In this document: piece by piece, positions 2,655-52,530 of the stretch
Position numbering within the stretch: the stretch's first letter is position 1
How the letters are laid out: each line of letters starts with the position of its first letter
NCBI GenBank assembly: GCA_038087875.1
Contig: JAXLNO010001914.1
Coordinates: 62,001-126,000 of the forward strand
Direction of reading: 5' to 3'
DNA length: 64,000 nt
DNA from: Malacoraja senta
Lineage: Eukaryota
Position numbers and translations under genes: made by a program
The notes under the pieces: generated by a model
The model's input: only the letters and a program-made list of their open reading frames with translations
What the model was told of the DNA's origin: nothing
Database searches by the model: none

Positions 2655-3503
2655 CCTCGATATCCCGCAGCTCCACTCATGCTCCCCCTCCCTCCATTCG
2701 TAACAAGGACAGAGTCCCCCTTATCTTCGCATCAGCCTTCGCATACAGCACATAATCCTTCGACATTTTCGCCACCTCCAACAGGATTCCAACACCAGCC
2801 GCATCTTCCCATATCCTCCCCTTTCTGCTTTCCGCAGAGACTGTTCCCTCTGCAACTCCCTGGTCAACTCGTCCCTTCCCACCCAAACCACCCCTTCCCC
2901 AGGTACTTTGCCCAGCAACCCCAGGAGATGCAACACCTGTCCCTTTACCACCCCCCTTGACTCCATCCGAGGACCCCAACAGTCATTTTAGGAGAGGCAG
3001 AGGTTCACTTACACCTCCTCCAACCTCATCTACTGTATCCGTTGTTCCAGGTGTTGACTCCTGTATATCGGCGAGACCAAGCGCAGGCTCGGCAATCGGT
3101 TCGCTGAACACCTCCGCTCAGTCTGCCTAAACCTACCTAATCTCCCAGTTGCTCAGCACTTTAACTCCCCCTCCCATTCCCAATCTGACCTTTCTGTTCT
3201 GGGCCTCCTCCATTGTCAGAGTGAGGCGCAGCACCTCATATTTCGCTTGGGTAACTTACAGCCCAGCGGTATGAACATGCACTTGTCTAACTTCAAGTAG
3301 CCCTTGCTTTCCCTCTCTCTCCATCCCCTCCCCCTTCCCCTTCCCAGTTTTCCCACCAATATTACTGTCTCTGACTACATTTTATCTCTGTACCACTCAC
3401 TCCCGACATCAGTCTGAAGAAGGGTCTCGACCCGAAACGTCACCCATTCCTTCTCTCGAGACCATGCCTGTCCCGCTGAGTTACTCCAGCATTTTGTGTC
3501 TAC
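2655..3503 (+). mobile_element. 5'-truncated Penelope-like retroelement (Neptune-like) with GIY-YIG endonuclease remnant
   Basis: ~3000-3300 translates as RFTYTSSNLIYCIRCSRC*LLYIGETKRRLGNRFAEHL..PVAQHFN..HLIFRLG.LQPSGMN. A Cys-rich linker (PRRCNTCPF) lies at ~2920-2945. The copy ends in the terminal repeat, with an imperfect TSD ACATTGTTCT/ACATTATTCT. Confidence 0.9.
3411..3444 (+). ncRNA. Minimal type I hammerhead ribozyme motif (Penelope-associated)
   Basis: CTGAAGA (3414-3420), extra A, GGGTC-TC-GACCC stem II, GAAA, then CGTC with palindromic ACGT and a GUC cleavage triplet (3439-3441). Confidence 0.75.
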
Positions 3504-4364
3504 ATTATTCTAGTATTGTTCTAGTATGTAATTAGTCAGGTACTTATATGAAGCATAAGAAAGGCATAGAGATTAACAATGGACATAATATTTGTCTAGA
3601 GTGATAGCTGGCTGGCTCTCCTTTCTGCGTGTCCTCAGGGCAGAATATAAACAGCAGGAAATTAGTGGGTTGCATTCTCTTGTTATATACATTAACATTG
3701 TTCAGTGTCATTCATGGGTACATTAGACAAAGTGCAATTCCAGGTGCATAATCTCTGGAGAAAGATGTATGGTCTAAAAACCAGCATCTAGTTGCTTCCC
3801 CAGTTTCCTAATAAACCCTCACCTTTCTAAGCTGATGGAGATTCTTCCACCATGCCGTCCAATTCTGGCTGATCATCCAAATCAATAATTCTTGGCTGAG
3901 CAGGAATTTTAGGTTCAAGATTCATTCTTTCATAATTACCTCAGGCTAATTCACCTCTTTTAGTACTGCATCCTAAACATGACATACTATGAGGCATTTG
4001 GCAAAATCACAGCATCAAAAATGTAGGTTGGTAAGCAATTAGCCACTGTTAATTCCTTCTTGCGCATGAGTAGAATCAGGGGGTAAATGGCTTGAGGAGT
4101 TTATGGGAACGTGGGAACATGCGATTAAGGGAAATAGATGTTTGATGGTCTGTGTAGACTTCAAGGGATAGAGCAAGTTTATGTGTTGTATAATTCTGTT
4201 ATTAAACTACATCTTTTCCTCTTTGGTCAGATAACCATTTGTGAACGACCGGAAATTAAAGAGTTATGGGGATCAAGCAGAAAATGGTTTTGAGACCAAC
4301 AACCATGTACTCACTACAGAGGAGCATGCTAACTCCTCAGGATTAGCCTTACAGGAACAACTTC

Positions 4365-5012
4365 ATAGAAATCTGGACAGTTGGTTTCTTGGAAGGAAGC
4401 AGAGGGTGATGGTGGAAGGTTGCTTCTCGGACTGGTCTGTGACTAGTGATGTGCTTCACGGTTCGGTGCTGGGCCCGTCATTGTTTGTCATCTGTATCAA
4501 TGATTTGGATGAGAACATACATGGCAGGAATAGCAAATTTGCTGATGATACAAAACTAGGTGGTTTTGCAGATAGTGAACATAGTTGTGAAAAATTGCAG
4601 CAGGATCTTGATCGATTGTCCAGGTGGACTGTGGAATGGTTGATGGAATTTAATACGGAGAAATGTGAGGTGTTGCATTTTGGGAAGTCTAACATGGGCA
4701 AGACCAACACAGCGAATGGTAGAGCTCTGGGGTATATAGAGTATTGTGTTCAGTTCTGGATACCGTGTTATCGGAAAGATGTTGTCAAATTAGAGACGGT
4801 ACGGAAAAGATTTACAAAGACTAGAGGTCTGAGCTAAAGGGGGAGGTTGAGTAGCCTGGGACTCTATTCCTTGGAGCGCAGAAGGATGAAGGGTGATCTT
4901 ATAGAGGTGTATAAAATCATGAGAGGAATAGATCGGGTGGATGCACAGACTCCCTTGCTCAGAGGAGGTGAATTGTGGACCAGAGCACATAGGTTTAAGG
5001 TGAAGGGGAAAA
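4365..5012 (+). mobile_element. CR1 LINE ORF2 (reverse transcriptase) fragment with internal deletions
   Basis: ORF 4241-4837 contains RKQRVMVEGCFSDW..GSVLGPSLF.I.INDLD..SKFADDTKLG..LQQDLDRL..W.MEFNTEKCEVLHFG. ORF 4847- contains LGLYSLERRRMKGDLIEVYKIMRG. Confidence 0.92.
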
Positions 5013-8000: not shown

Positions 8001-11000
8001 TTTTAAAGTTAAGAGGATGTATAACAACTTTATACTTTGAGTCTGATACTGAGTAACACTAAATCCTTTGATGGATGAGTAGAAACAACAGTTACAATTA
8101 ATGGTAGATGGTTTAATGGCATAATTAGTTGAATTTAGATCTAATTTTTAACTGTCTTTGCTCAAAAAAGTATATATTTTTAATTCCTAATCCTTTTCTT
8201 GGATGAATCTGCTCCCACACAAACAGTCTGGGTCATACCCAAGGACACAATCTATTTTAATAAATCAAAATGTGATACTATTAGATTGACCCTGTATTCT
8301 TCAATCCATTTTAGCTGACAATAAAATTAATCTAATAATTATACCACTAATGTGATGTTTAACCAATTACTCCTGAGGTTTCTTGTTGTATATTAAAGCT
8401 GCTACGTAACTAATTTTACACATTCTTCCATCATGGTCTAATTTATTGATTTATTTAATAAAGCTCTATACAAAAGCATCCTATCACAGAGTGGGTTAAA
8501 AATAAAAGCATTCTTGCTTCACAGCAAGAGAATAAAACTTTTTAACTTGAAAGAAGCAAACCACAAATAATGTTTGCTGCTCTATCATAACAAACAGCTG
8601 GTATACTTATGACCTTCCTTGCAAAAAAATATTTACATAGTTCTCTGTTAATTTTAACAAATTAGTATTATCACAAGGAATAATACCTTGAAAGTACATT
8701 GGTTAAAATCATAACACTGATAGTAATGAAAATAGTTAAATTAAAATTATACCACAATGATGCAAATAAAGTTTCTATTTTGAGCTTTTCTCATTTTGTT
8801 AGGTCTTCGGCACAAATCTTTACAATAATGCATCATATTCCTAGGTCTTATAATTGGTAATCTGCAAAAAACCTAACAAATATTTTATTGATGTTAAATA
8901 ATGCTAGATTTACAGCATAACTACACTGTCAGAACCATCCCACAGAACATCCTTACAGAGGAAATGCAGGTCCCATGGTGAATCCCATGGCTGACAAAAG
9001 CAACACATGTTCACGCAAAAACATAATGGAGAAGAATTAGATTAAAGGCCTGCTTGCTGTGGTTGCATCCAAAAGAAACGGTGAAAACACAGTTCATGCA
9101 TGTTGGCTTTTCAGTTGATAAGCCAAGTAACAGACCCAATATTCATAAATTGTGACGCACATTCTCCACTCTGGGTGGCTTTGACCACACTTGGTTTGCA
9201 AGCAGCTGATTCCTGAGCAGTTTGCCAAGTCAGTGACATCATTCAGAGACGAGACTAGTTCAGTCTTTCTCCACAGTCACTAAATGGTAGAGATGCAACG
9301 CTAATATCTGGTATTGTGTGAGAGCTGGGTGCAGAGCGACTTCTAACATTAATTGTGTGAACCAGTGCCTTCAAAAGTGACCTAAACAGCCAACTTGAGA
9401 GAGTAAAATCTGTTGGGTCTACCATGCGCTGGCATACATTCGATTAGGTGAATGGCCTCCTTCTGTGCCTTAATAATTCTTTGAAAGTATATTTGAACTT
9501 TTGGGTCATGACAACTTGGTGCTATGATGTAGTGACAAGTTGATGGAAATTCTTGAAGGAGAAATATATTTATTCCTGTATAAGAAACTTGTAACCTGTT
9601 AAATAATTAACAGAAATGCTATAGATTTTCAACCCGGATTCCAGAATTATACAACTGTGACATCAGCTCCTCCACTATATGTATTATGGATCAGTATCAA
9701 TTTGTTTCTTTTCCACCCTTTCTTTTCCCAAGCTCAGCTTTCATCATTAAGGCTCAACCAGACAAATCTCATGTAACCTACTGTATGATCATCTGTAATG
9801 ATCATTATTCGTCTTGTTGCCATCAAATTCTGCTGATAGGTGGTCCAAGAAAAAAATCCTGTTTGATAATTAAAAGAGAAAGGTCTCTTATCCAATTAGC
9901 AAGGCATAGACAAATTTAATAAAGTTAGGCACATCTTTCAATGTTAACAATGGAAAAGTGATGTTGTCATGACCAAAAACTTCAAATGTTCTTTCAAAGA
10001 ATTGTTGCTGCACAGAACAAAGCCATTCAATTAATTAAGTCTACACCAGCTCATGGTAGATATTGCAAACTACTCTCTCAAGTGCCTCTTTTGAAGGCAC
10101 TCTTTCACACATATAATTCCAGATCCTAATAATGCTCAAAACAAATTATATTATCACATTTTCTTATAGTTTAAGGTAAAATGTTAAATCTGTGTCCCGT
10201 GGTATTTTATCCACTCTGAGCAACAGGGACAGGTTGCATCATCAGAAGAGCTTTTAAAGACTTGAATATAAATCAGTCAATAGTTTTTCCACTGTCTTCG
10301 AAGAACAACAATGAACTTGCTTCCTTCCAAACATTTAAGAGTGCAGTTTGTAGCACTGATGAATGTCTGACATAATTTGCTTCAATTAACAGATATTTAG
10401 TTTCAGGTAGCAGCAAACATGATCAAGGTTCTATTCATATAGAATCATCTCCTACAGGAAGCAAATTGCCCATTGCTGGACCATGTGGCTGCTGGACCAA
10501 ATAGCTACATTCACAAAACGAGTGGATGATAAACTAAATTGCAAAAGATGGGGAGGAAGTGACCTGAACAAGTTAGAAAAGCACAGGGTCAACCTTATTT
10601 TCTTCCTTCCAATTTTGAATAGACCAAATGAGCCTTCATACGAGCTGCAAACTTTCCAAAGATATATTGGTAGATTATTCAACAAGGACGGTAATACAAT
10701 GATCACCTGGTTTAGATGCCCATGAGGTCTTTAGTTGCAATCATGAATGCTCTGTCCCCTGCGCCATCTCGAACAGTCTAACCTCACAAAAACTCTCTCA
10801 AGAGGATCAGCAAAAGGAAAATGCCATTTATTTGTCTGTTAATTAATTTTTAGGGGTCCATTCACATTAAGCTTAAATCAAATAGGATTAGACATACAAA
10901 AGAAACACAACAACATCACACTACTCCATGTATAATTGAACACATATGCTTGAATAATCCTGATAAATCAGCTTGAGTGACATTATCTTCAAATCATGGC

Positions 11001-12280
11001 AAGCCTTGAGTTTCAGCATTTAATATTATCCCATAGTTTTTCACAGACATGATATGGTCATTGCAGGTACCATGCCTTCGTGTAAATTAGAGCTCTTCTT
11101 CTTTCAGATTTCCCTCCCCCTCCATCTGACTGTTCTTTTGGGTCATTTTGAAGCCCTTTCATCTACTGAGTTTAAGCCATTCCCAGGGTAGCTACTGGGT
11201 TGCATATAATTTGTCTGATTAAATTTAAAGAAGGGCTATTTTTACAGAGCACTGTTTCATCGTTCCCCCCTCCCCCTCCTTGGACTTCATGCTGAGGCCT
11301 TTAATGAGGCTTCAAACATCACTTTACCTCAGCTTTGGCCAGCCTTGTTAAGACAGTCTTCATTTGTCAGAAAAAAATCTTTATTGGGGTCATGGAATTC
11401 ATGCGCTTTGATTAAAGTTAATCAAGAAAAAGAACCTGCACCCAAACCATGTACAATTGACCTTCAGTAAAATCTATCATTAGAACCCTCCTGCAGAATC
11501 GCATAGTTAAACACAGTCATAAATAATATCAGGTTTCCTTACAGAGAATCACAATTTACTGCATTTATAAGCAGTCACCTTCAGCTACACCCCTTTATTT
11601 TAGCTGCCTTTTTAATTTTAGATTGGCACACAACCTGTTAAAGTCAGGTCCACCAGAAACTATGATTCCATTCCTGCCTTTGATGGAATCTAAGGCAACT
11701 ATGCCATCGAGAATGTCTCCTCTTTGAACAAAGTTTAAATTCAAATGTTGTTTGTAATAGTTCAACATTTCTCATCCTCAAGTGTTTCTTCGTTTTCCTG
11801 AAAGGGCAGGCTCTAATTTTTAGAACATGAAAATTTGTTCTATACTCCCCGTCCAGCAAAATAGTTTTCTCAATCCACTCAATCAGTTTCTCTTAATATC
11901 TAGATATTTTCAATCAAATCATGCCTAATCATTCTAAGTTTCTACATTTGTATTATAAATCTTGCTTTGTATGCAAAATACATGTAAATCTAGCACCACA
12001 GTAAGCCCACATTATAACGGAACATAGAGGGGTGGGGGGAAATGTTGTTCGTTACTACCGATTGTCCACTATAACCGAGTAAGGTATTATCTTTGTATAG
12101 ACTAAGTGGGACCCATTGGGTGCCTGTGACACGGGAGGTCTGGTCCCCCAACGCAACCCGTTCCCCAGTGCAATATTCCACCACTCACCCGTTCTCCCAA
12201 TGCAACCCATCCCCCCCCCCCCCAATGCAATATTGCACCACTCACGCATAGTACCCAACTGCGCAGGCACGGCTCACTTC

Positions 12281-12780
12281 CCCTCATCCCCCAACACCCC
12301 CTCCACCTCCTCTTCACCTTCTTTCCTCTCTCCTCCTCCCCTCCCCTCCCTCACCTCTCTCTCCCTCCCTCTCCTTTCCCCTACCCTCCCTCTCCTTTCC
12401 CCTACCCTCAGTTACTCCTTCCCACCCTCCCTTCATAACTTCTCTCCCATCCCTACCCCCCTCCCATCCCTCTATCCCCCACTCACCTCCCCTATCCCCT
12501 CCACTATCCCTCCTGACCTCCCCCACTGCCCTCCTCTCCCTCTATTCCCCGCTCCCTACCTCCCCCAGTCCCACCTCCTCTCCCTCTATTCCACCTCCTC
12601 CCCCACTCTCCTCACCTCCCCCACTTTCCCCCTCTCCCTCCCTACCCCTTCCTTTCCCTCAATCCCCCCACCCTCCCTCCTCACCCAAGGATCCTTCCCT
12701 CTCCTTGTCCCCTCCCCCAATCCCTCCATCACCTCTCCTTTCCCCTCCCCTCAGTCACTCCCTCCCTCCCTCCATCCATA
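12281..12780 (+). repeat. ~500 bp polypyrimidine (C/T) low-complexity tract
   Basis: Almost entirely C/T runs such as CCCTCC and CTCTCC. This explains the spurious Pro/Ser/Leu ORF 12116-12781. Confidence 0.95.
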
Positions 12781-12980
12781 AAAAGCAGCATCTCCGCACA
12801 AACTGCTCGGCCACCCTGCAACCCGACTCACCCTCCCTCCCTCTGCCCATTCCAGCTCAGCCGCCGCTCGGACCGTCCCCGTCCAGCCCGCCCGCTGCTG
12901 CCGCTCGGCCCGTCCCTGCCCTGCCCACCCGCCTACCTGCTCGCTGCCACTGCCGGGCCATGGGGTAGGAGGGGGGGGGG

Positions 12981-13061
12981 ATGGAGTCAGTGTTCGTCAC
13001 GGTGGGCACCACGAGTTTCGATGAGCTGGTGGAGAAAATCTCCTCCGAGAAGACAGTTAGG
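12981..13061 (+). CDS. ALG13: ALG13 (UDP-GlcNAc transferase subunit) coding exon 1, probably a transposon-captured copy
   Basis: MESVFVTVGTTSFDELVEKISSEKTVR matches the ALG13 N-terminal motif VFVTVGTTSFD. It has 27 codons, then AGG|GTGAAT as a phase-0 donor, matching the vertebrate exon-1 length as I recall it. Kozak context is GGGATGG. No exon 2 was recognised downstream. Confidence 0.88.
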
Positions 13062-13602
13062 GTGAATTACCACAACGGTGGCGGCAGAGGAGACCCCGGG
13101 GGACGGTTAGACGGGACCGCCATTGCCGCAGAGGGCGGGCGGGAGAGCGGGGTGAGTGATGAGGGAGAGAGACGGGACCAGGGCCTCCACTGAATCCCAC
13201 CCCCCCCCCCCGCTGCCGGTGGTGGGGAAGACGAAAGACAAGTTACTGTGAAGAGGGGAGAGAGGAGTTTGTGAGTGAGGTGGGACGGGCCGCCACTGGT
13301 GGGGCAGGAAGGGGTGTCGCCATCCCGGCTGTGGCTTTGACTGACAGGAGAAGATACCAATCTGCATGGCGCTGACTGAAGGAATCTGTGCACGCGCAGT
13401 TTTTTTGATGTTTAAACCTCAAAAACTTTTACAATATACCACCGATCGGAACAAAACTTGTTGCACTCGCAGCACAGGAGAACGATGAGTAACCTGCCGA
13501 ACAATCGTAGCGCTATCACATACCGTTTTTGCGCAAATAGAAAAACCGTGCAAACCGAAAGAGCACAAGATTTGAGTTTTAGTTATGTATAGAAAAGTGG
13601 CT

Positions 13603-13732
13603 GAAACAAACAACTGCAGTTGCTGATTAATACACAAAAGGGCACAAAGTTCTGGAGTAACTCAGCAGATCAGGCAGCATCTCTGGGGAACATGGACAGG
13701 TGATGTTTCAGATCGAGACCCGTCTTCAGACT
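13603..13732 (-). mobile_element. Penelope terminal-repeat copy with decayed hammerhead motif
   Basis: CTGGAGTAACTCAGCAGATCAGGCAGCATCTCTGG..GGTGATGTTTCAGATCGAGACCCGTCTTCAGAC, with the tail at 13603-13640. Confidence 0.8.
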
Positions 13733-14914
13733 CTCAATTGGAACTGGGCCTAGAATCTAGGTGAGTTGATGGCCCCAGTCTGCTGGTGGTCAGGGGAGAG
13801 GCGTGGATCATCGGAACCAATGGAGTGGAGTGAGCCGGAGGTGGCGTGGGCAGCCATCGGTAAGTCCATCCGCTATAACCAAAATCCGTTATAAAGGGGA
13901 CTGTTAAAATTAGGGTTTTCAAATTATTTGTAGTATTAATGTTTTAAAACACTCTCCCTTCCACTTCCCTTAACATGGAAGGGCAGGAAGAGCCATCCTC
14001 CCTTCGTCTGCCAGCTATCATTTCCGCACCCTATTACAGCCATTCTTGGTAGAAGGATAGCATGTGGAATTTAAAACACACCATGCGGTTTAAAATAAGA
14101 AATAATTGGCAGGAACTCAACAGGCTGGTGCATTGGATCTGGAAGCCCATCTTAATGTGAAATCAACACCGTCTATTGCTAAATTGTCCAATTTGCATTT
14201 CTTCTGTTTTGTACTTTCTGCATTCAACGTTCTCTTTACATTAATGCTGTGAAGGTATCTGGTTTGAAACTGAGGTATTTGGATTATAATAAAACACCAA
14301 AAAAGTAACATGACTTTATGCTTTCAAGGATGTGGGCATTGCTGACAAGCAGCATTTAATATCCATCCTTGGTTGTTATTTGATAGGGATTTAACACCGA
14401 CTCAAATGAATGACAATGTATTTCAATGTATATACACCATTAAAATGGTTGCCAATCTTTGAAAGATTTTGCTAAAAATATATTATTAAAATATTAATAT
14501 TGATCAATTTAAAATCTCAAGTGAGATTCATGGAAATAATAATATCTGATTATTGCAGTTATTTCTAAAAACACCTAGTTACTGCCAGATGACAATTAAC
14601 AACATAAATATATCAAACAGACTAATTAATTGCATAATGTTCATTGATAAAATTACAGTAAAAGCATAATTCAGATTCCCCTGAAAACTTGCATGCAGCC
14701 ACATTGCCTATTTTAGATTTAATTACAGTTATGTCAAACCTTAAACGTTCTTATTTGGGTATTGATAGCTCAAGACAATGTTTCAACGTCCTTCCAGCAA
14801 CTTAGAAAATACACGAGGATAGCCTGCTCAGAGCTTTAGGACTAAATCAATTCTGTATTCAACAGGCTTTGCAAGAGAGTGGTCCATGAGAAATTAAATA
14901 GCAATGATGGAATG

Positions 14915-18194: not shown

Positions 18195-18690
18195 ATGATA
18201 GCATAAGTGGTTACTTTACTAATAATCCAAGGACTTGAACTAATGATTCAGAGAACGAGTTCAAATGTCACCATAGCAACTGATGAAATAAATTCAATTA
18301 ATTTAATAAATCTAGAATAATAAGTTAGCAACAGTAATGTGGACTACTAGATTGTTACGAACAACACCTCAAGGTTACTACTATATCCCGGAAAAGAAAA
18401 CCTACTGTTTTTATCTAGTCTGGCACATAAGTAATTCCAATCTAATAATGTGTAGGAAAGAACTACAGATGCTGGTTTAAATCAAAGATGGACACAAATG
18501 CTGGAGTAACTCAGCGGAACAGGCAGCATCTCTGGAGAGAAGAAATGGGTGACGATTCGGGTCTCGACCCAAAAGGTCACCAATTCCCTCTCTCAAGAGA
18601 TGCTGCCTGTCTCACAGAATTACTCCGGCATTTTGTGTCCAAACTAATAATATTGTGGCATACCCTTAAATGCCCACTCAAATGCACATA
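18195..18690 (+). mobile_element. Old tRNA-derived SINE interrupted by a Penelope-derived insertion
   Basis: Degenerate B-box-like GAGTTCAAATGTCACC followed by AAATTCAATTAATTTAATAAATCTAG. The SINE sequence resumes after 18651. Confidence 0.5.
18450..18640. mobile_element. Fold-back Penelope terminal-repeat insertion
   Basis: Two inverted arms meet at GGGTCTCGACCC (~18559-18570). Near-perfect TSD CCAATCTAATAAT (18437-18449) / CCAAACTAATAAT (18639-18651). Confidence 0.85.
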
Positions 18691-20879: not shown

Positions 20880-22500
20880 CAGTGCCCTCCATAATGTTTA
20901 GGACAAAGACCCATCATTTATTTATTTGCCTCTGCACTCCACAATTTTGAGATTTGTAATAGAAAAAAATCACATGCGGTTAAAGTGCACATTGTCAGAT
21001 TTTAATAAAGGCCATTTTTAAACATTTTGGTTTCACCATGTAGAAATTACAGCTGTGTTTATACATAGTCCCCCCATTTCAGGGCACCATAATGTTTGGG
21101 ACACATGACTTCACAGGCGTTTGTAATTGCTCAGGTGTGTTTAATGCAGGTATAAGAGAGCTCTAAGCACCTAGTCTTCCTCCACTTTCCATCACCTTTG
21201 GAAACTTTTATTGCTTTTTCTCAACATGACGACCAAATTTGTGCCAATGAAAGTCCAATAAGCCATTATGAGTGAGAAACAAGAATAAAACTGTTAGAGA
21301 CATCAGCCAAACCTTAGGCTTACCAAAATCAACTGTTTGAAACATCATTAAGAAGAAAGAGAGCACTGGTGAGCTTACTAATCGCAAAGGGACTGGCAGG
21401 CCAAGGAAGACCTCCACAGCTGATGACAGAAGAATTCTCTCTATAATAAAGAAATATCCCCAAACACCTGTCCGACAGATCAGAAACACTCTTCAGCAGT
21501 CATGTGTGGATTTGTCAATGACCACTGTCCTCAGACGACTTCATGAACAGAAATACAGAGGCTACACTGCAAGATGCAAACCACTGGTTAGCAGCAAAAA
21601 TAGGATGGCCGGGTTACAGTTTGCCAAGAAGTACTTAAAAGAGCAACCACAGTTCTGGAAAAAGGTCTTTTGGACAGATGAGACGAAGATTAACTTATAT
21701 TACAGTGATGGCAAGAGCAAAGTATGGAGAAGAGAAGGAACTGCCCAAGATCTAAAGCATACCACCTCATCTGTGAAACAAGGTGGTGGCTATGTTATGG
21801 CCTGGGCATGTATGGTTGCTGAAAGTACTGGCTCACTTATCTTCATTGGTGATACAACTGCTGATGGTAGTAGCACAATGAATTCTGAAGTGCATAGACA
21901 CATTCTACCTGCTCAAGTTCAAACAAATGCCTCAAAACACATTCTACAGCAAGACAATGATCCCAAACATACTTGTAAAGCAACAAAGGAGTTTTTCAAA
22001 GCTAAAAATGGTCAATTCTCGAGTGGCCAAGTCAATCACCCGATTTGAACCCAATTGCGCATGCCTTTTATATGCTGAAGAGAAAATTGAAGGGGACTAG
22101 CCCCCAAAACAAGCATATGCAAAAGATGTCTGCAATACAGGCCTGGCAGAGCATCACCAGAGAAGACACTCAGCAACTGGTGATGTCCATGAATTGCAGA
22201 CTTCAAGCAGTCATTGCATGCAAAGGATATGCAACAAAATACTAAACATGATTACTTTCATTCACATGACATTGCTGTGTCCTAAACAATATGGTGTCCT
22301 GAAATGGGGGGACTATGTATAAACACTGCTGTAATTTCTACACGGTGAAACCGAAATGAAAATAGAATGGCCTTTATTAAAATCTGACAATGTGCACTTT
22401 AACCACATGTGATTTTTTATATTACAAATCTCAAATTGTGGTGTACAGAGGCAAATAAATAAATGATGGGTCTTTGTCCCAAAAATTATGGAGGGCACTA
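20880..22500 (+). mobile_element. Full-length Tc1-like DNA transposon, IR/DR type
   Basis: TA|CAGTGCCCTCC...GGAGGGCACTA|TA. TIRs are ~225 bp, each with outer and inner direct repeats (CCATAATGTTTRGGAC at ~20889 and ~21087). Confidence 0.96.
21226..22245 (+). pseudogene. Disabled Tc1 transposase
   Basis: Paired-like N-terminus with GRPRKT, plus WTDET and QQDNDPKH motifs. NPIAH replaces NPIEH (catalytic E to A). It has premature stops and frameshifts (ORF pieces 21506-22048 and 22045-22245). Confidence 0.93.
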
Positions 22501-26553: not shown

Positions 26554-26765
26554 AGGAAAGAACTGCAGATGCTGGTTTAAATTGAAGGTAGACACACAAA
26601 TGCTGGAGTAACTCAGCAGGACAGGCAGCATCTCTGGAGAGAAGGAATGGGTGATGTTTCGGGACGAGACCCTTCTTCAGATTTCTGAAGTCTGAAGAAG
26701 GGTCTCAACCCAAAACATCACCCATTCCTTCTCTCCAGAGATGCTGCCTGTTTTGTGTCTACCTT
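26554..26765. mobile_element. Head-to-head Penelope terminal-repeat pair with two decayed hammerhead motifs
   Basis: Perfect 16-bp TSD AGAAGAATCCATGTCT at 26538-26553 and 26766-26781. The minus-strand copy has the tail; the plus-strand copy ends at GTCTACC. Confidence 0.9.
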
Positions 26766-36700: not shown

Positions 36701-38229
36701 GGGAAGGGGAAAGGATTGGAGTGGGCACAGGAGAGGTGGAGTTGCTGCTAAACTAAGAGAGAAAGCCATGACATCCCATCTTGGAGTACCTTTGTCATTT
36801 TGACTGCAAGGAAAAATATCAAAGAAAATAGGGTATCTAAAACAAATCAATTAACGAACATAAGATTATTTGCAATATTCTTAAAGTAATGGCATTGAAA
36901 ATGAAAAGCAAAATGCAAAGTTCACACAGACTTGGTATGTGCTATGTCGAAGCCAGTCCATCTTTTATTTAAAACTCAACTGTATGACTTTAAAAATTAA
37001 GTAATTCCCATCTGCCATTAAAGTATACAATACAGTTGTAATTGTTTGCAGCAGCATGGATTAATCACGATTTACATAGTATCCTGTGGCCACATTTACA
37101 AAAGCATTTTTCTGAGATTTTCAGAGCATTTTACTTTCAATTTATAGTATTGATATTTGCATTCAAATTATGCTAAAGATTGTAACCAGCTGTCCATAAG
37201 AAGATCTCCTCATCTTATTACTAAGCAGTTTCATTTGGTGGAAATATTTCTATTCTGTTACAATGTTACGAGAAATGGCTTTAGTAAAACATTTAAAGCC
37301 TATTGTTAGTTGAAATGCCTCATCTCGTTCCTTTCTCAACTCCACCATTTATTGGCGTGCATCCGTTCACTGACGCTAAAGCATAAACGTAATTCATTGG
37401 TTATTGACCAACTCAAAATAGGTAAGGTTAAACTGACCAGTTAAAATCTAAAATAATAACAGAATAATTCTTCATTGCACTGCAAAAGAATAAGACCAGT
37501 TTTCCAAAAACTTTGTTGGCAATGACATTAAGAGAATGCTGGCATGTGTCCAAACATATATGTACAATCAGTGAGAGGAGTGGTTGGACAGTAATTGTGC
37601 CTTTATTGTCAAAGTTATTCCAACTAAAACACGAGCGGCAACTTCCAATGAAAAGAAACAACAAATTAAAGATAATTATGTCTTTCCTTCATTAAAAAAC
37701 AAAACAAAAATTACAGGCAATAACCCAAGGCTATTATCAAAGTGGAGTGAATAATTAATGTTTACATTTTCTTTTCCCTCAGTTTATATAAGAATCCTTT
37801 TTTTTTGCAAATATATATTAAAAAATCTGTGAACCAGTCTTGCAGGTACCTTAGCCATTAACATCCTGCAAATCTTTATTCTCAAGCAACTCATGTCAAT
37901 TTTCCTGAGAAGACTCCAATGTGTTTGCTGGGAGTCTTTTGTTCTGCAGACTTTAAATAAAAGTAATTGAAACTGCCAAGTGTATGGTAATCTCAAATCC
38001 AATTTGTACAGACATTTTAATGTTTTAAGTGCCTTCGGTTTGACGGACAGAATTCCATACCTTAAATTTTCTATTCTAATTTCAATATTATAGGGCAACA
38101 TTAAAAAAAAAACTTATATTTGGAAACTGCAATAGTTTTTGCAATTCATCATACAATACATAAATTCAAAAATTATCCATCGAAGTATTGAAATCAATAG
38201 AATGGACAATGATCAGCAAGATGTGGTAA

Positions 38230-38475
38230 AGGGCCTGTCCCACTTGGGCGTCATTTGCGCATCATTTACGCGACATCATTTATGCGTCACGACGCATGAC
38301 GCACGCGTCGTGACACGCACGCGATGCGCGCATGGTGTGCATTACGCGCGCATGGTGCGTGGTGACGTAGGCAATTACACGCGATCGCTCGCGGAGGCCC
38401 AGGATTTTGGGATGTACAAAATCTTCGCGCGCCATCTGCGTGACGCGCAAATGACGCCCAAGTGGGACAGGCCCT
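38230..38475. mobile_element. PIF/Harbinger-like MITE, young and CpG-rich
   Basis: Perfect 31-bp TIR AGGGCCTGTCCCACTTGGGCGTCATTTGCGC. TAA TSD at 38227-38229 and 38476-38478. Confidence 0.92.
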
Positions 38476-38569
38476 TAAGTCTTTCCATTCATGTGAAGAC
38501 TGGTCACAAGTCGTGAGATATTTGTCACCTCACACCGGAGACGCATTAATTATGGAATCAGTGCACCAG

Positions 38570-38823: not shown

Positions 38824-38995
38824 CAAAGTGTTGGAGTCTCTCAATGGGTCAGGCAGCATTTCTGGAGGATGTGGATAAACAAGGAACCTGGAAGAAAACA
38901 TTATCTATCCATGTCCTCCAGTGATACCACCTGACCCACTGAGTTACTCCAGCACTTTGTGTTTTATCGTGTAAATCAACATCTGCAGTTCCGTT
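38824..38995. mobile_element. Older fold-back Penelope terminal-repeat insertion, hammerhead core lost
   Basis: Inverted arms CAAAGTGTTGGAG..GGGTCAGGCAGCAT and CTGACCCACTGAGTTACTCCAGCACTTTG, plus the tail CATCTGCAGTTCC. Confidence 0.75.
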
Positions 38996-39119
38996 TGGAC
39001 TCCAAAAGTGATGGAAAGGGGCCCTTCAGCACATCAGGTTCATGCCAACTATCCAATATTGTGTTATTTTTAATTCTCCATATATTCCCATCAGCTCCCC
39101 CTAGATCGTACCCCTCACC

Positions 39120-48180: not shown

Positions 48181-49049
48181 TCTCCTCATAAAAATATTCT
48201 TCAGGTTTTCACTAACTGTCCTGCTTCTTGGTTCCTCTTATTCATCCAAATATCCCTACTGAATTGTGAGACCCAGCTTTAATTATTATTAATAATGATA
48301 ATGCTTATTTACTGTAATATTGTTAATTGTGAGGGGTTTAAGCAAACAAGCCAAAATCTATAATCTTGCTGTACACTGTTGACAACAAAATTAAAAGAAA
48401 ACAATTTTCCCATCAACTTGAGGTTGTGGTGTTAATGCTGAATCAAGGAACTATTTACTCCATCTGTCCTGGTTCAATAAGTAACTATGCAATTTGGATT
48501 TTAAATAGTGAGAAACCGAGAACAAAAAAATAATATTAACTGTTTACTACAGCTCTATGTGACAGATGAACACAGTTAACACCAGGAGTGTTACGATAGC
48601 TCAGAGGGGTAGAAATTTTCTTTTATGCATACATCTACACTCATCATCTGCGTTGTAAACGATTTTTCCATCTCATACACACCTTATCCACAGCAAGCTT
48701 CCAGAATTCAGCTTGAGAACAATTAATAGGGTTGACCTTGTTAGTTGTACAATTGTTTCAAGCTGGCGATCCTATCTCAGTAATACTCCTTTCTTCTACA
48801 GCTCTAAGAAGGAAATTAATTTTTAGAACTCTGGCTTCTAGCTCATCGCCATATTTGATCACCACATGTCTCCCTGTTTGGCTTAATATTCATTTTTGAT
48901 TGTTAACACAAGGTGAAGCATCTTGAGATATTTTTGCAATAGCAGACTAATGGTAATTGTTGCAACCACTGTAAGTTATCAAATGACCCATTGAATGATT
49001 GAAAACCATAAATATTTCAATATCAAAAACTAAACTTCATCTGATTGTT

Positions 49050-49590
49050 TATAGAGCCATACAGCACAGAAATAGGCCTTACCTCCCAACTCATCCATGC
49101 CGACCAAGATGCCCATCTGTGCTAGTCCCATCTTCCATATTTGACTATATCTACATAAATCTTTCCAAAATATATACTACCCAAATGTTTTTTAAATGTT
49201 GTTATTGTACTTGCCTCATCTACATCCTCTGGTAGCTTGGTCCATATATAAACCACCCTCTATTATTTTTTTCACCTCTCACTTTAAACCAATGCCCTCT
49301 AGTTCTTAACTCCCCAATCATGGGAAAAAGACTATGTGTATACATCCTTTCTATGTCCATCATGATTTTATACACCTCTATAAGATCACATCTCAGTCTC
49401 CTATACTCCAAGGAACAAAGTTCCAGTCTGCTCAACCTCTCCCTATAACTCGTCCCTCAGGTCCTGGCAACATCCTTGTAAATCTTTGCTCCACTCATTC
49501 CAGCTGAACAGCAACCTTCCTTTAGCATGGTGACCGAAACTAAACACAATACTCAAAGGGCGGCCTCGTGAATGTTGTGTACAACTGCAA
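49050..49590 (-). mobile_element. CR1 LINE 3' fragment
   Basis: ORF 49220-49435 reads LELCSLEYRRLRCDLIEVYKIM..LFP..ELRTRGHWFKVRG, followed by a CR1 3' UTR. Confidence 0.88.
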
Positions 49591-49632
49591 AATAAATGTT
49601 AGCGCTATCGTGTACTGTTTTGGCGTAGTTCC

Positions 49633-49835
49633 NNNNNNNNNNNNNNNNNNNNNNNNNNNNNNNNNNNNNNNNNNNNNNNNNNNNNNNNNNNNNNNNNNNN
49701 NNNNNNNNNNNNNNNNNNNNNNNNNNNNNNNNNNNNNNNNNNNNNNNNNNNNNNNNNNNNNNNNNNNNNNNNNNNNNNNNNNNNNNNNNNNNNNNNNNNN
49801 NNNNNNNNNNNNNNNNNNNNNNNNNNNNNNNNNNN
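49633..49835. other. Assembly gap (203 N)
   Basis: Run of N. Confidence 1.
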
Positions 49836-51879: not shown

Positions 51880-52530
51880 TTACGTTAACGTTAACATACA
51901 CGTTGCTCTCAATTTCACTTGGACCCTCTCTGACATTTCTCTCCCCTTTCTTGATGTTTCTATCTCCATCACAGGAGACAGACTATCGACTGACGTCTAC
52001 TACAAACTTATCGACTCCCACAGTTATCTGAACTATACTTTCTCCCACCCTGCCTCCTGCAAAGGATGCAGGCAGCCTGAGGAGGCAGCCTCATTGCAGT
52101 CATCAAAGTAGCAGAGAAAATGTTAGGGTAAGGTTCTAGTGTACATTTGGAACAAGAACTGTTCAATGTAACCAATAAAAAGGTAGGCATAGCTGGGTCC
52201 CATGCGAGTGCCCATGGCTACACTTTTTAACTTGGAGAAAGTGAGAGCAATCAAAAGAGAATTTGTGGGGTGTGAGGACAAGCTGTGCCAGGTGGAGGAG
52301 AACGTCAGTAGAGGGAAATTGTTAAACTCTGTTCTCTGAGCCCCCTCAGCTGTATCAACCTATTACCTGCCAGCCTTTGTCCTGCCCCTCAACTCTTCCA
52401 GCTTACTCTGCTCCCACCCCCCCCCTCCCCACCGCACAACCAGTCTGAAGAAGGGTCCCGACCCGAAACGTCACCTATCCATGTTCTCCACAGATGCTGC
52501 CTGACCCACTGAGTTACTCCAGCACTGTTT
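51880..52530. mobile_element. Rearranged Penelope element: two RT pieces in opposite orientations plus terminal repeat
   Basis: Plus strand gives ALNFTWTLSDISLPFLDVSISITGDRLSTDVYYK..DSHSYL.Y.FSHP. Minus strand 52070-52340 gives AMGTRMGPSYA and YFDD. The plus-strand terminal repeat spans 52340-52530. Confidence 0.88.
52442..52475 (+). ncRNA. Minimal hammerhead ribozyme motif, intact
   Basis: CTGAAGA (52445-52451), A, GGGTC-CC-GACCC, GAAA, CGTC, ACC. Confidence 0.75.

What the first reader, a model, noticed from the sequence alone, without database searches (positions are those of the whole stretch)
12097..13593. Helitron that has captured ALG13 exon 1: apparent rolling-circle exon shuffling in a cartilaginous fish
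Seen: an intact 27-codon ALG13 first exon with strong Kozak context, GT donor and GC/CpG-rich flanks lies between a Helitron 5' end (TCTATACATAACTAAAAC, minus strand, 13593) and a hairpin-plus-CTAT 3' end (12124-12097). I found no exon-2 signature (LGY..L.LQ.GRG..VISHA) in the next 51 kb. Known: Helitrons capture host gene fragments, including promoters and first exons, in maize and vesper bats. Inference: this is a mobilised first-exon/splice-donor cassette, distinct from the real ALG13 locus. I am not aware of this being described in chondrichthyans, but I cannot search.
Basis: partly seen in the sequence, partly recalled or inferred. Interest (0 to 1): 0.85.

Follow-up and report, generated by a model that had tools for sequence, protein, structure and literature searches.

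The report
Orphan ALG13 first exon in mobile-looking insert
A stray but intact copy of the first exon of the sugar-transferase gene ALG13, with its start codon and splice signal, sits in a 1.5-kb inserted block far from any other ALG13 exon; it is probably transposon cargo of a known kind, but this copy does not show the classic Helitron end marks.

Summary
The exon is real. 12981-13061 (+) encodes 27 residues, 20-21 of them identical to shark and ray ALG13 N-termini, and the GT donor sits at the conserved exon 1/intron 1 boundary. It is an orphan: tblastn finds no exon 2-4 anywhere in the window. Real chondrichthyan ALG13 genes span only 8-27 kb and have an OTU-domain gene about 7 kb downstream.

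The Helitron part is not established from this copy:
- The 3' hairpin is no more stable than shuffled sequence.
- The 3' end reads CTAT or TTAG, not CTRR.
- No boundary choice gives A|TC...CTRR|T.
- An exact 8-bp direct repeat (TGTATAGA, P about 0.01) covers both claimed ends.
- No second copy of the block or its ends lies in the window, and no outside copy could be fetched.

Best reading (0.55): a young, CpG-retaining DNA copy of the ALG13 5' end carried by a non-autonomous, probably rolling-circle element. It resembles HelibatN3/NUBPL in bats and would be a portable promoter/first-exon/donor cassette.

The scan noted the same thing before at four other places in this genome, and one follow-up called it a family with hundreds of copies. 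I could not check that. It is a new member of a known kind, of moderate interest.

The parts
12094..12101 (.). Left copy of the exact 8-bp direct repeat TGTATAGA.
12102..12280 (-). GC-rich end module. It holds the imperfect 17-nt palindrome 12108-12124 (GGGACCC ATT GGGTGCC) and two 26-nt repeats, 12163-12188 and 12220-12245. GC jumps from 0.41 to 0.60 at about 12100.
12281..12780 (+). 500-bp polypyrimidine (CT-rich) low-complexity tract with one CpG.
12781..12980 (+). GC 0.72, CpG-rich 5' flank or 5'UTR-like stretch. A TATA-like CATAAAAAG sits just upstream at 12777-12785. A 36-nt tandem duplication covers 12860-12932, and a two-codon in-frame uORF (ATG GGG TAG) covers 12960-12968.
12981..13061 (+). 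ALG13 first coding exon: 27 codons, ending in phase 0.
13062..13359 (+). GT donor (GTGAAT) followed by about 300 bp of GC/CpG-rich intron-like sequence. The same frame runs on to a stop at 13191.
13360..13585 (-). No significant second copy in the window.
13586..13593 (.). Right copy of the direct repeat TGTATAGA. It may instead belong to the 5' end of the neighbouring mini-element.
13601..13740 (+). Separate Penelope-like (hammerhead-type) mini-repeat abutting the block, with at least 12 other copies in the window. Not part of the cassette.

Best explanation
The block at about 12102-13593 is a young DNA-level copy of the 5' end of ALG13. It holds a GC/CpG-rich promoter-proximal and 5'UTR stretch, the first coding exon with its start codon, a phase-0 splice donor and about 0.3 kb of intron 1. 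This cargo lies between two non-genic modules and sits away from the real gene. The vehicle is most likely a non-autonomous mobile element that captured the fragment at the DNA level, probably of the rolling-circle (Helitron-like) kind. Where such a copy lands in sense orientation in an intron, it could act as a portable promoter/first-exon/donor cassette.

Shown here: the exon's identity, the conserved donor position, the orphan status, the CpG retention, the sharp compositional edges and the junction repeat.

Inferred: mobility, multi-copy status, the Helitron vehicle and any transcription or splicing.
For: - Exon identity.
- Orphan status: tblastn with shark and platypus ALG13 finds only exon 1, and every other hit has E >= 1.
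- The four-exon CDS spans 7.9 kb in Chiloscyllium, 18.5 kb in Mobula and 27.2 kb in Heterodontus. Each of the loci that shows its downstream flank (Chiloscyllium, Mobula, S. torazame) has another gene 6.5-7.6 kb downstream, OTU-domain in Mobula. tblastx of the Chiloscyllium locus against the window shares only exon 1 and repeats.
- The cargo includes 5' flank and intron, so it is a DNA-level copy, not a retrocopy.
- The block keeps its CpGs (o/e 0.5-1.36 against 0.37), which fits a recent arrival.
- A hairpin-plus-terminus site of this quality occurs only about 0.16 times per kb per strand in the window, and here it falls at the GC step at 12100.
- Leads only, not checked: four other ALG13-exon notes, plus notes of shared-termini Helitrons, head-to-tail stacks and a Rep/helicase ORF in this genome.
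Against: - The canonical Helitron signature is not met in this copy. The terminus is CTAT or TTAG, not CTRR. The flanking bases are T...A or T...T, and no shift of the boundaries gives A|TC...CTRR|T.
- The hairpin is no better than shuffled sequence.
- An exact 8-bp direct repeat, extendable imperfectly to about 16 nt, covers both junctions (P 0.012). Canonical Helitrons make no target-site duplication (PMC4067079).
- The claimed 5' end may belong to the adjacent mini-element.
- No second copy of the block or of either end is in the window.
- No outside copy was retrievable.
- A 203-N run at 49633-49835 leaves a small loophole for a hidden exon 2.
Confidence: 0.55

Rival explanations
1. The block is a dispersed copy of the ALG13 5' end, but it was inserted by a process that duplicates the target. 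Candidates are a non-Helitron transposon or a templated or repair-mediated insertion. On this reading TGTATAGA, perhaps extending to about 16 nt, is a target-site duplication, and the Helitron-like end motifs are chance.
For: - An exact 8-mer sits at both junctions, P 0.012 for random 30-nt pairs. It extends imperfectly as TGTATAGA(CT/A)AAGTGG.
- The hairpin is at chance level, CTRR is absent and the A/T site is absent.
- Structure-only Helitron calls have high false-positive rates (PMC11417382).
- The right repeat copy resembles the 5' end of the neighbouring mini-element copies, as if that element had been the target.
Against: - There are no terminal inverted repeats, LTRs or poly(A) at the ends of 12102-13585, so no known TSD-making class fits.
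- Unchecked notes from other windows report shared termini with varied cargo.
Confidence: 0.3
2. This is the native ALG13 exon 1 with its own CpG-island promoter. Intron 1 would then be longer than 51 kb, or exon 2 would lie in the N run. The flanking end-like motifs would be unrelated repeats.
For: - The exon is intact with a strong start context, a conserved donor and CpG-rich flanks, as at a real promoter.
- One N run lies downstream.
- The species' own ALG13 protein was not found in the databases, so it could not be compared.
Against: - No exon 2-4 and no OTU-gene start lie in the 51 kb downstream. Three other chondrichthyan genes fit in 8-27 kb.
- The CpG-rich domain ends abruptly at the two junction repeats.
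- Unchecked notes report the same exon at four other loci.
Confidence: 0.07
3. The ORF resembles ALG13 only by chance.
For: The Pfam hit is below the curated cut-off. Searches of the PDB and of the 1.84-billion-protein library with the short query found no ALG13.
Against: The first 16-17 residues are identical to shark and platypus ALG13, with the same start and the same exon end, tblastn E 2e-9. The exon is also 75% identical at DNA level to the Chiloscyllium exon.
Confidence: 0.01

Closest known systems
HelibatN3 carrying NUBPL promoter, 5'UTR, exon 1 and partial intron 1 in vesper bats (Pritham and Feschotte 2007; Thomas et al. 2014, PMC4224331)
   Same: The cargo has the same anatomy: 5' flank, 5'UTR, first coding exon, splice donor and the start of intron 1. 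It sits in a short non-coding element away from the parent gene. Bat Helitrons also favour gene 5' ends.
   Different: The bat elements have vetted TC...hairpin...CTAG ends, A/T insertion sites, empty sites and counted copies. None of these could be shown here, and CTRR and the A/T site fail in this copy. The host is a cartilaginous fish and the gene is ALG13.
Canonical Helitron (HLE1) non-autonomous elements
   Same: The block starts with 5' TC, and a 17-nt palindrome lies 11 nt from the proposed 3' end. It has no coding capacity and carries captured host DNA.
   Different: The 3' end is CTAT/TTAG, the flanks are not A and T, an 8-bp junction direct repeat is present, and the hairpin is weak.
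Helentron/Helitron2 (HLE2) and their non-autonomous HINE/DINE-1 derivatives (PMC4067079, PMC11417382)
   Same: With the boundaries set at T|TC...TTAG|T the insertion lies between T and T. A short palindrome sits near the 3' end, and a large internal simple-repeat tract is present, as in some HINEs.
   Different: There are no 12-17-nt terminal or subterminal inverted repeats between the two ends.
Native ALG13 locus of chondrichthyans (Chiloscyllium punctatum BEZZ01000007.1, locus L001)
   Same: Exon 1 has the same length, start and donor position, and the exon is 75% identical at DNA level.
   Different: The real gene has exons 2-4 within 7.9 kb and another gene 7 kb downstream. The window has neither, and the flanks show no detectable similarity.

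Membership tests
ALG13 (Glyco_tran_28_C, PF04101) exon 1 | N-terminal M-x-x-VFVTVGTTSFD motif at the start of the domain | tested here: met
   PF04101 profile positions 2-23, E 0.023. Identity is 20-21/27 to shark and ray ALG13. tblastn E 2e-9.
ALG13 (Glyco_tran_28_C, PF04101) exon 1 | Exon ends after codon 27 with a GT donor at the conserved boundary | tested here: met
   Aligned with Chiloscyllium exon 1 (L001 10001-10081), the donors fall in the same column.
Native ALG13 gene locus | Exons 2-4 follow exon 1, and an OTU-domain gene lies downstream | tested here: not met
   No other exon in the window. tblastx with L001 shares no gene start. Genes elsewhere span 8-27 kb.
Canonical Helitron (HLE1) | 5' end starts with TC | tested here: met
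   Minus strand at 13593 reads TCTATAC. The feature is trivial on its own, and this end may belong to the neighbouring mini-element.
Canonical Helitron (HLE1) | 3' end is CTRR | tested here: not met
   The end reads CTAT at 12097, or TTAG at 12102.
Canonical Helitron (HLE1) | 16-20-nt palindrome about 11 bp from the 3' end | tested here: inconclusive
   A 17-nt palindrome with one mismatch lies 11 nt from 12097. Its dG is -2.6 kcal/mol, z -0.17, and 81/200 shuffles fold as well. Such sites occur 0.16 times per kb per strand.
Canonical Helitron (HLE1) | Inserted between A and T, with no target-site duplication | tested here: not met
   The flanks are T (5') and A or T (3'). An exact 8-bp direct repeat lies at both junctions, P 0.012.
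Canonical Helitron (HLE1) | Many copies share both termini, and empty sites exist | not testable with these tools
   No second copy in the window. The genome cannot be searched, and outside searches were blank.
Canonical Helitron (HLE1) | An autonomous Rep/helicase partner has the same ends | not tested
   Only an unchecked note of a Rep/helicase ORF elsewhere in the genome.
Helentron/Helitron2 (HLE2) | 12-17-nt terminal or subterminal inverted repeats | tested here: not met
   No inverted pair between 12102-12300 and 13550-13593 (and reading).
Helentron/Helitron2 (HLE2) | Insertion between T and T | tested here: inconclusive
   This holds only if the ends are set at T|TC...TTAG|T.

The most novel reading that the evidence does not exclude
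The junction repeat may be neither chance nor a target duplication. It may be terminal redundancy from a rolling-circle concatemer or head-to-tail stack, with junction ...CCCACTTAG|TCTATACA... and a unit of 1492 nt. That would mark a non-canonical Helitron lineage in cartilaginous fish, with T|T target, a TTAG end and no inverted repeats. This lineage would spread an intact promoter/ATG/27-codon/phase-0-donor cassette, and some copies would start chimeric transcripts of host genes.
Probability: 0.12. Interest if true: 0.65.

Novelty: new member of a known kind. Interest (0 to 1): 0.4.

Why it matters
If the family is real, cartilaginous fish would join maize and vesper bats as lineages in which a DNA transposon spreads ready-made promoter/first-exon/splice-donor units through the genome. 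That is a direct route to alternative first exons and exon shuffling.

No paper in the searched library holds both 'Helitron' and 'ALG13'. The nine papers that hold both 'Helitron' and 'elasmobranch' are, by title and abstract, not about gene capture.

For this single copy the practical value is different. It is an intact, CpG-retaining exemplar, and its odd junction repeat would help to define how the family really ends and inserts.

Tried and rejected
- **Short-query protein searches.** PDB sequence search with the 27-aa exon gave only a chance DHFR hit. Homologue search with the 70-aa read-through ORF gave nothing, because of the length filter. The search of 1.84 billion representatives gave only a low-complexity hit.
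- **Padded-profile workaround.** I aligned the ORF with a piece of that low-complexity hit, so that exon 1 stood opposite gaps and the profile was long enough for 165-aa proteins (A1). This recovered Heterodontus and platypus ALG13. It is a technical trick and its E-values are weak. The identity was then confirmed independently by tblastn.
- **Exact-protein look-ups.** The two ORFs of the block are not on record.
- **DNA pattern scans.** Two metagenome scans and one prokaryote-genome scan with the exon, using CpG-tolerant patterns, found nothing.
- **DNA of real loci.** The Heterodontus, Mobula and S. torazame files were too large to fetch.
- **Homology of the flanks.** Left against right flank, left flank against the 13300-13600 module, and the 3' module against 13730-14000 all scored at shuffle level. 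Left flank against the mini-element copies was also at shuffle level.
- **A 'second copy' beside the N run.** The match 13444-13533 against 49532-49625 looked significant. Most of it belongs to an abundant unrelated repeat also present in Chiloscyllium. Only about 26 nt remain, which is not significant.
- **Other.** Rfam found nothing in the window. The scan's own sequence look-up was blank.

Full report
**What is there.** On the + strand an ATG at 12981 opens 27 codons, MESVFVTVGTTSFDELVEKISSEKTVR. They end in AGG|GTGAAT at 13061/13062. The start context has G at -3 and G at +4. A two-codon in-frame uORF lies at 12960-12968. The surrounding 12781-13359 is 65-72% G+C with CpG o/e 0.6-0.9, against 0.37 for the window. 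One N run lies at 49633-49835. I did not try to fill it.

**Is it ALG13 exon 1?** Pfam gives only Glyco_tran_28_C (PF04101), profile positions 2-23, E 0.023, below the curated cut-off. In the ESM Atlas feature search, 85 of the 100 nearest clusters carry that family. Searches with the short peptide alone failed.

A profile padded so that 165-aa proteins passed the length filter (A1) recovered ALG13 of Heterodontus francisci and of platypus. Their N-termini are identical to the window's peptide for the first 16-17 residues. tblastn of these proteins against the window hits 12981-13064 at E 2e-9. Among 120 listed ALG13 proteins the closest N-termini are:
- Mobula hypostoma, 21/27
- Heterodontus, 20/27
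- Chiloscyllium, 19/27

In all of them the next residues (ILQ.LG...) belong to exon 2. In the Chiloscyllium punctatum locus (L001) exon 1 is 10001-10081. The window's exon aligns to it at 75% DNA identity, with the donor in the same column. The observation of an intact ALG13 first exon is confirmed.

**Is it the native gene?** Neither a motif scan of all six frames nor tblastn at E up to 100 finds exon 2, 3 or 4 anywhere in the 64 kb. The real four-exon coding gene spans:
- 7.9 kb in Chiloscyllium
- 18.5 kb in Mobula
- 27.2 kb in Heterodontus
- more than 20 kb in S. torazame

Another gene, OTU-domain in Mobula, starts 6.5-7.6 kb downstream in the three loci that show it (Chiloscyllium, Mobula, S. 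torazame). tblastx of the Chiloscyllium locus against the window shares only exon 1 and interspersed repeats. The exon is therefore most likely an orphan copy. The remaining loophole is an intron longer than 51 kb, or an exon hidden in the N run. I put that at about 0.07.

**The claimed Helitron ends.** Both strings are present and unique in the window. Against the published definition the copy scores as follows. The definition is 5' TC, 3' CTRR, a 16-20-nt palindrome about 11 bp from the 3' end, and insertion between A and T without duplication (PMC4067079; PMC11417382).
- TC is met, but is trivial.
- CTRR is not met: the end reads CTAT, or TTAG if it is placed at 12102.
- The palindrome 12108-12124 has the right size and distance. 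It has one mismatch, folds at -2.6 kcal/mol, and is matched by 81 of 200 shuffles.
- The flanking bases are T and A.

A site of this quality (7-bp stem with at most one mismatch, then 4-14 nt, then CTRR or CTAT) occurs 21 times on the two strands of the window, about 0.16 per kb per strand. Its position exactly at the GC step at 12100 is therefore mild evidence, no more. HLE2/Helentron features fare no better, because no terminal or subterminal inverted repeats exist.

**An unreported feature.** TGTATAGA occurs at 12094-12101 and again at 13586-13593. Two random 30-nt pieces of this window share an exact 8-mer with P 0.012. The repeat continues imperfectly, as TGTATAGA-CT-AAGTGG against TGTATAGA-A-AAGTGG. 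No joint shift of the boundaries within the repeat gives A|TC...CTRR|T. The only TC start gives T|TC...TTAG|T. There are three readings:
- It is a target-site duplication, and the element is then not a canonical Helitron.
- It is terminal redundancy from a rolling-circle concatemer or a head-to-tail stack.
- The right copy belongs to the abutting Penelope-like mini-element. Two of that element's longer copies begin ATGT[CG]TAGGAAAG just before AACTGCAG.

Wider homology between the flanks and the end modules is at shuffle level. Only other copies of the family can decide between these readings.

**Other copies.** The window holds none. A candidate beside the N run turned out to be mostly an unrelated abundant repeat. 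Protein, exact-protein and DNA-pattern look-ups outside the window were blank.

The scan's own notes report the same ALG13 exon in Helitron-like elements at four other places in this genome. One follow-up speaks of hundreds of copies. Other notes report shared-termini families with varied cargo, head-to-tail stacks and a Rep/helicase ORF. I treat these as leads. They moved my prior away from 'native locus', but I could not test them.

**Age and state.** The whole block keeps its CpGs. The 13360-13593 module has o/e 1.36, while the adjoining mini-element has 0.27. This fits either a recent insertion or protection from methylation.

[quoted passage not shown] Here the exon ends in phase 0, so splicing to any phase-0 acceptor would keep the frame. 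Whether this copy is transcribed is unknown.

**Verdict.**
- Real ALG13 exon 1: about 0.99.
- Orphan, non-native copy: about 0.9.
- Carried by a transposon, probably of rolling-circle type: 0.55.
- Inserted by some other, duplication-making process: 0.3.
- Native exon: 0.07.

It is a new member of a known kind and was already noted elsewhere in this genome by the scan. Interest is moderate.

Noticed in passing
window 38228-38478: A MITE-like element of about 250 bp with perfect 32-nt terminal inverted repeats (AAGGGCCTGTCCCACTTGGGCGTCATTTGCGC...). Its interior is packed with CpG (o/e about 1.4), the most CpG-dense spot of the window.
   Followed up: partly
window 13601-13740 and at least 12 other sites (e.g. 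2071-2157, 3411-3498, 18457-18538, 26557-26681, 38896-38997, 52442-52526): A short Penelope-like (hammerhead-type) mini-repeat is scattered through the window on both strands. One copy abuts the ALG13 block within a few bases.
   Followed up: partly
window 49000-49597 and 4739-5012 (-); L001 15664-16720 and 19580-20160: An abundant interspersed repeat is shared between this genome and Chiloscyllium punctatum, where copies lie in ALG13 introns.
   Followed up: partly
window 49598-49632, just before the N run 49633-49835: 35 nt resembling 13505-13540 of the CpG-rich module (21/26 identical, with differences mostly transitions). This could be a truncated second copy running into the masked stretch. 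It is not significant alone, and the N run was left untouched.
   Followed up: partly
window 12860-12932: A 36-nt tandem duplication (83% identical) in the GC-rich stretch just upstream of the ALG13 start codon, and a two-codon in-frame uORF at 12960-12968.
   Followed up: no
window 4241-4837 (+) and 21506-22048 (+): A reverse-transcriptase ORF fragment (PF00078, E 6e-9) and a Tc1/Tc3-type transposase fragment (PF01498, E 5e-10).
   Followed up: partly
L001 (Chiloscyllium) and the Mobula, Heterodontus and S. torazame look-ups: In cartilaginous fish the glycosyltransferase part of ALG13 is annotated as a separate 164-204-aa, four-exon gene. An OTU-domain gene starts about 7 kb downstream, rather than forming one long fused gene as in the mammalian long isoform.
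   Followed up: no
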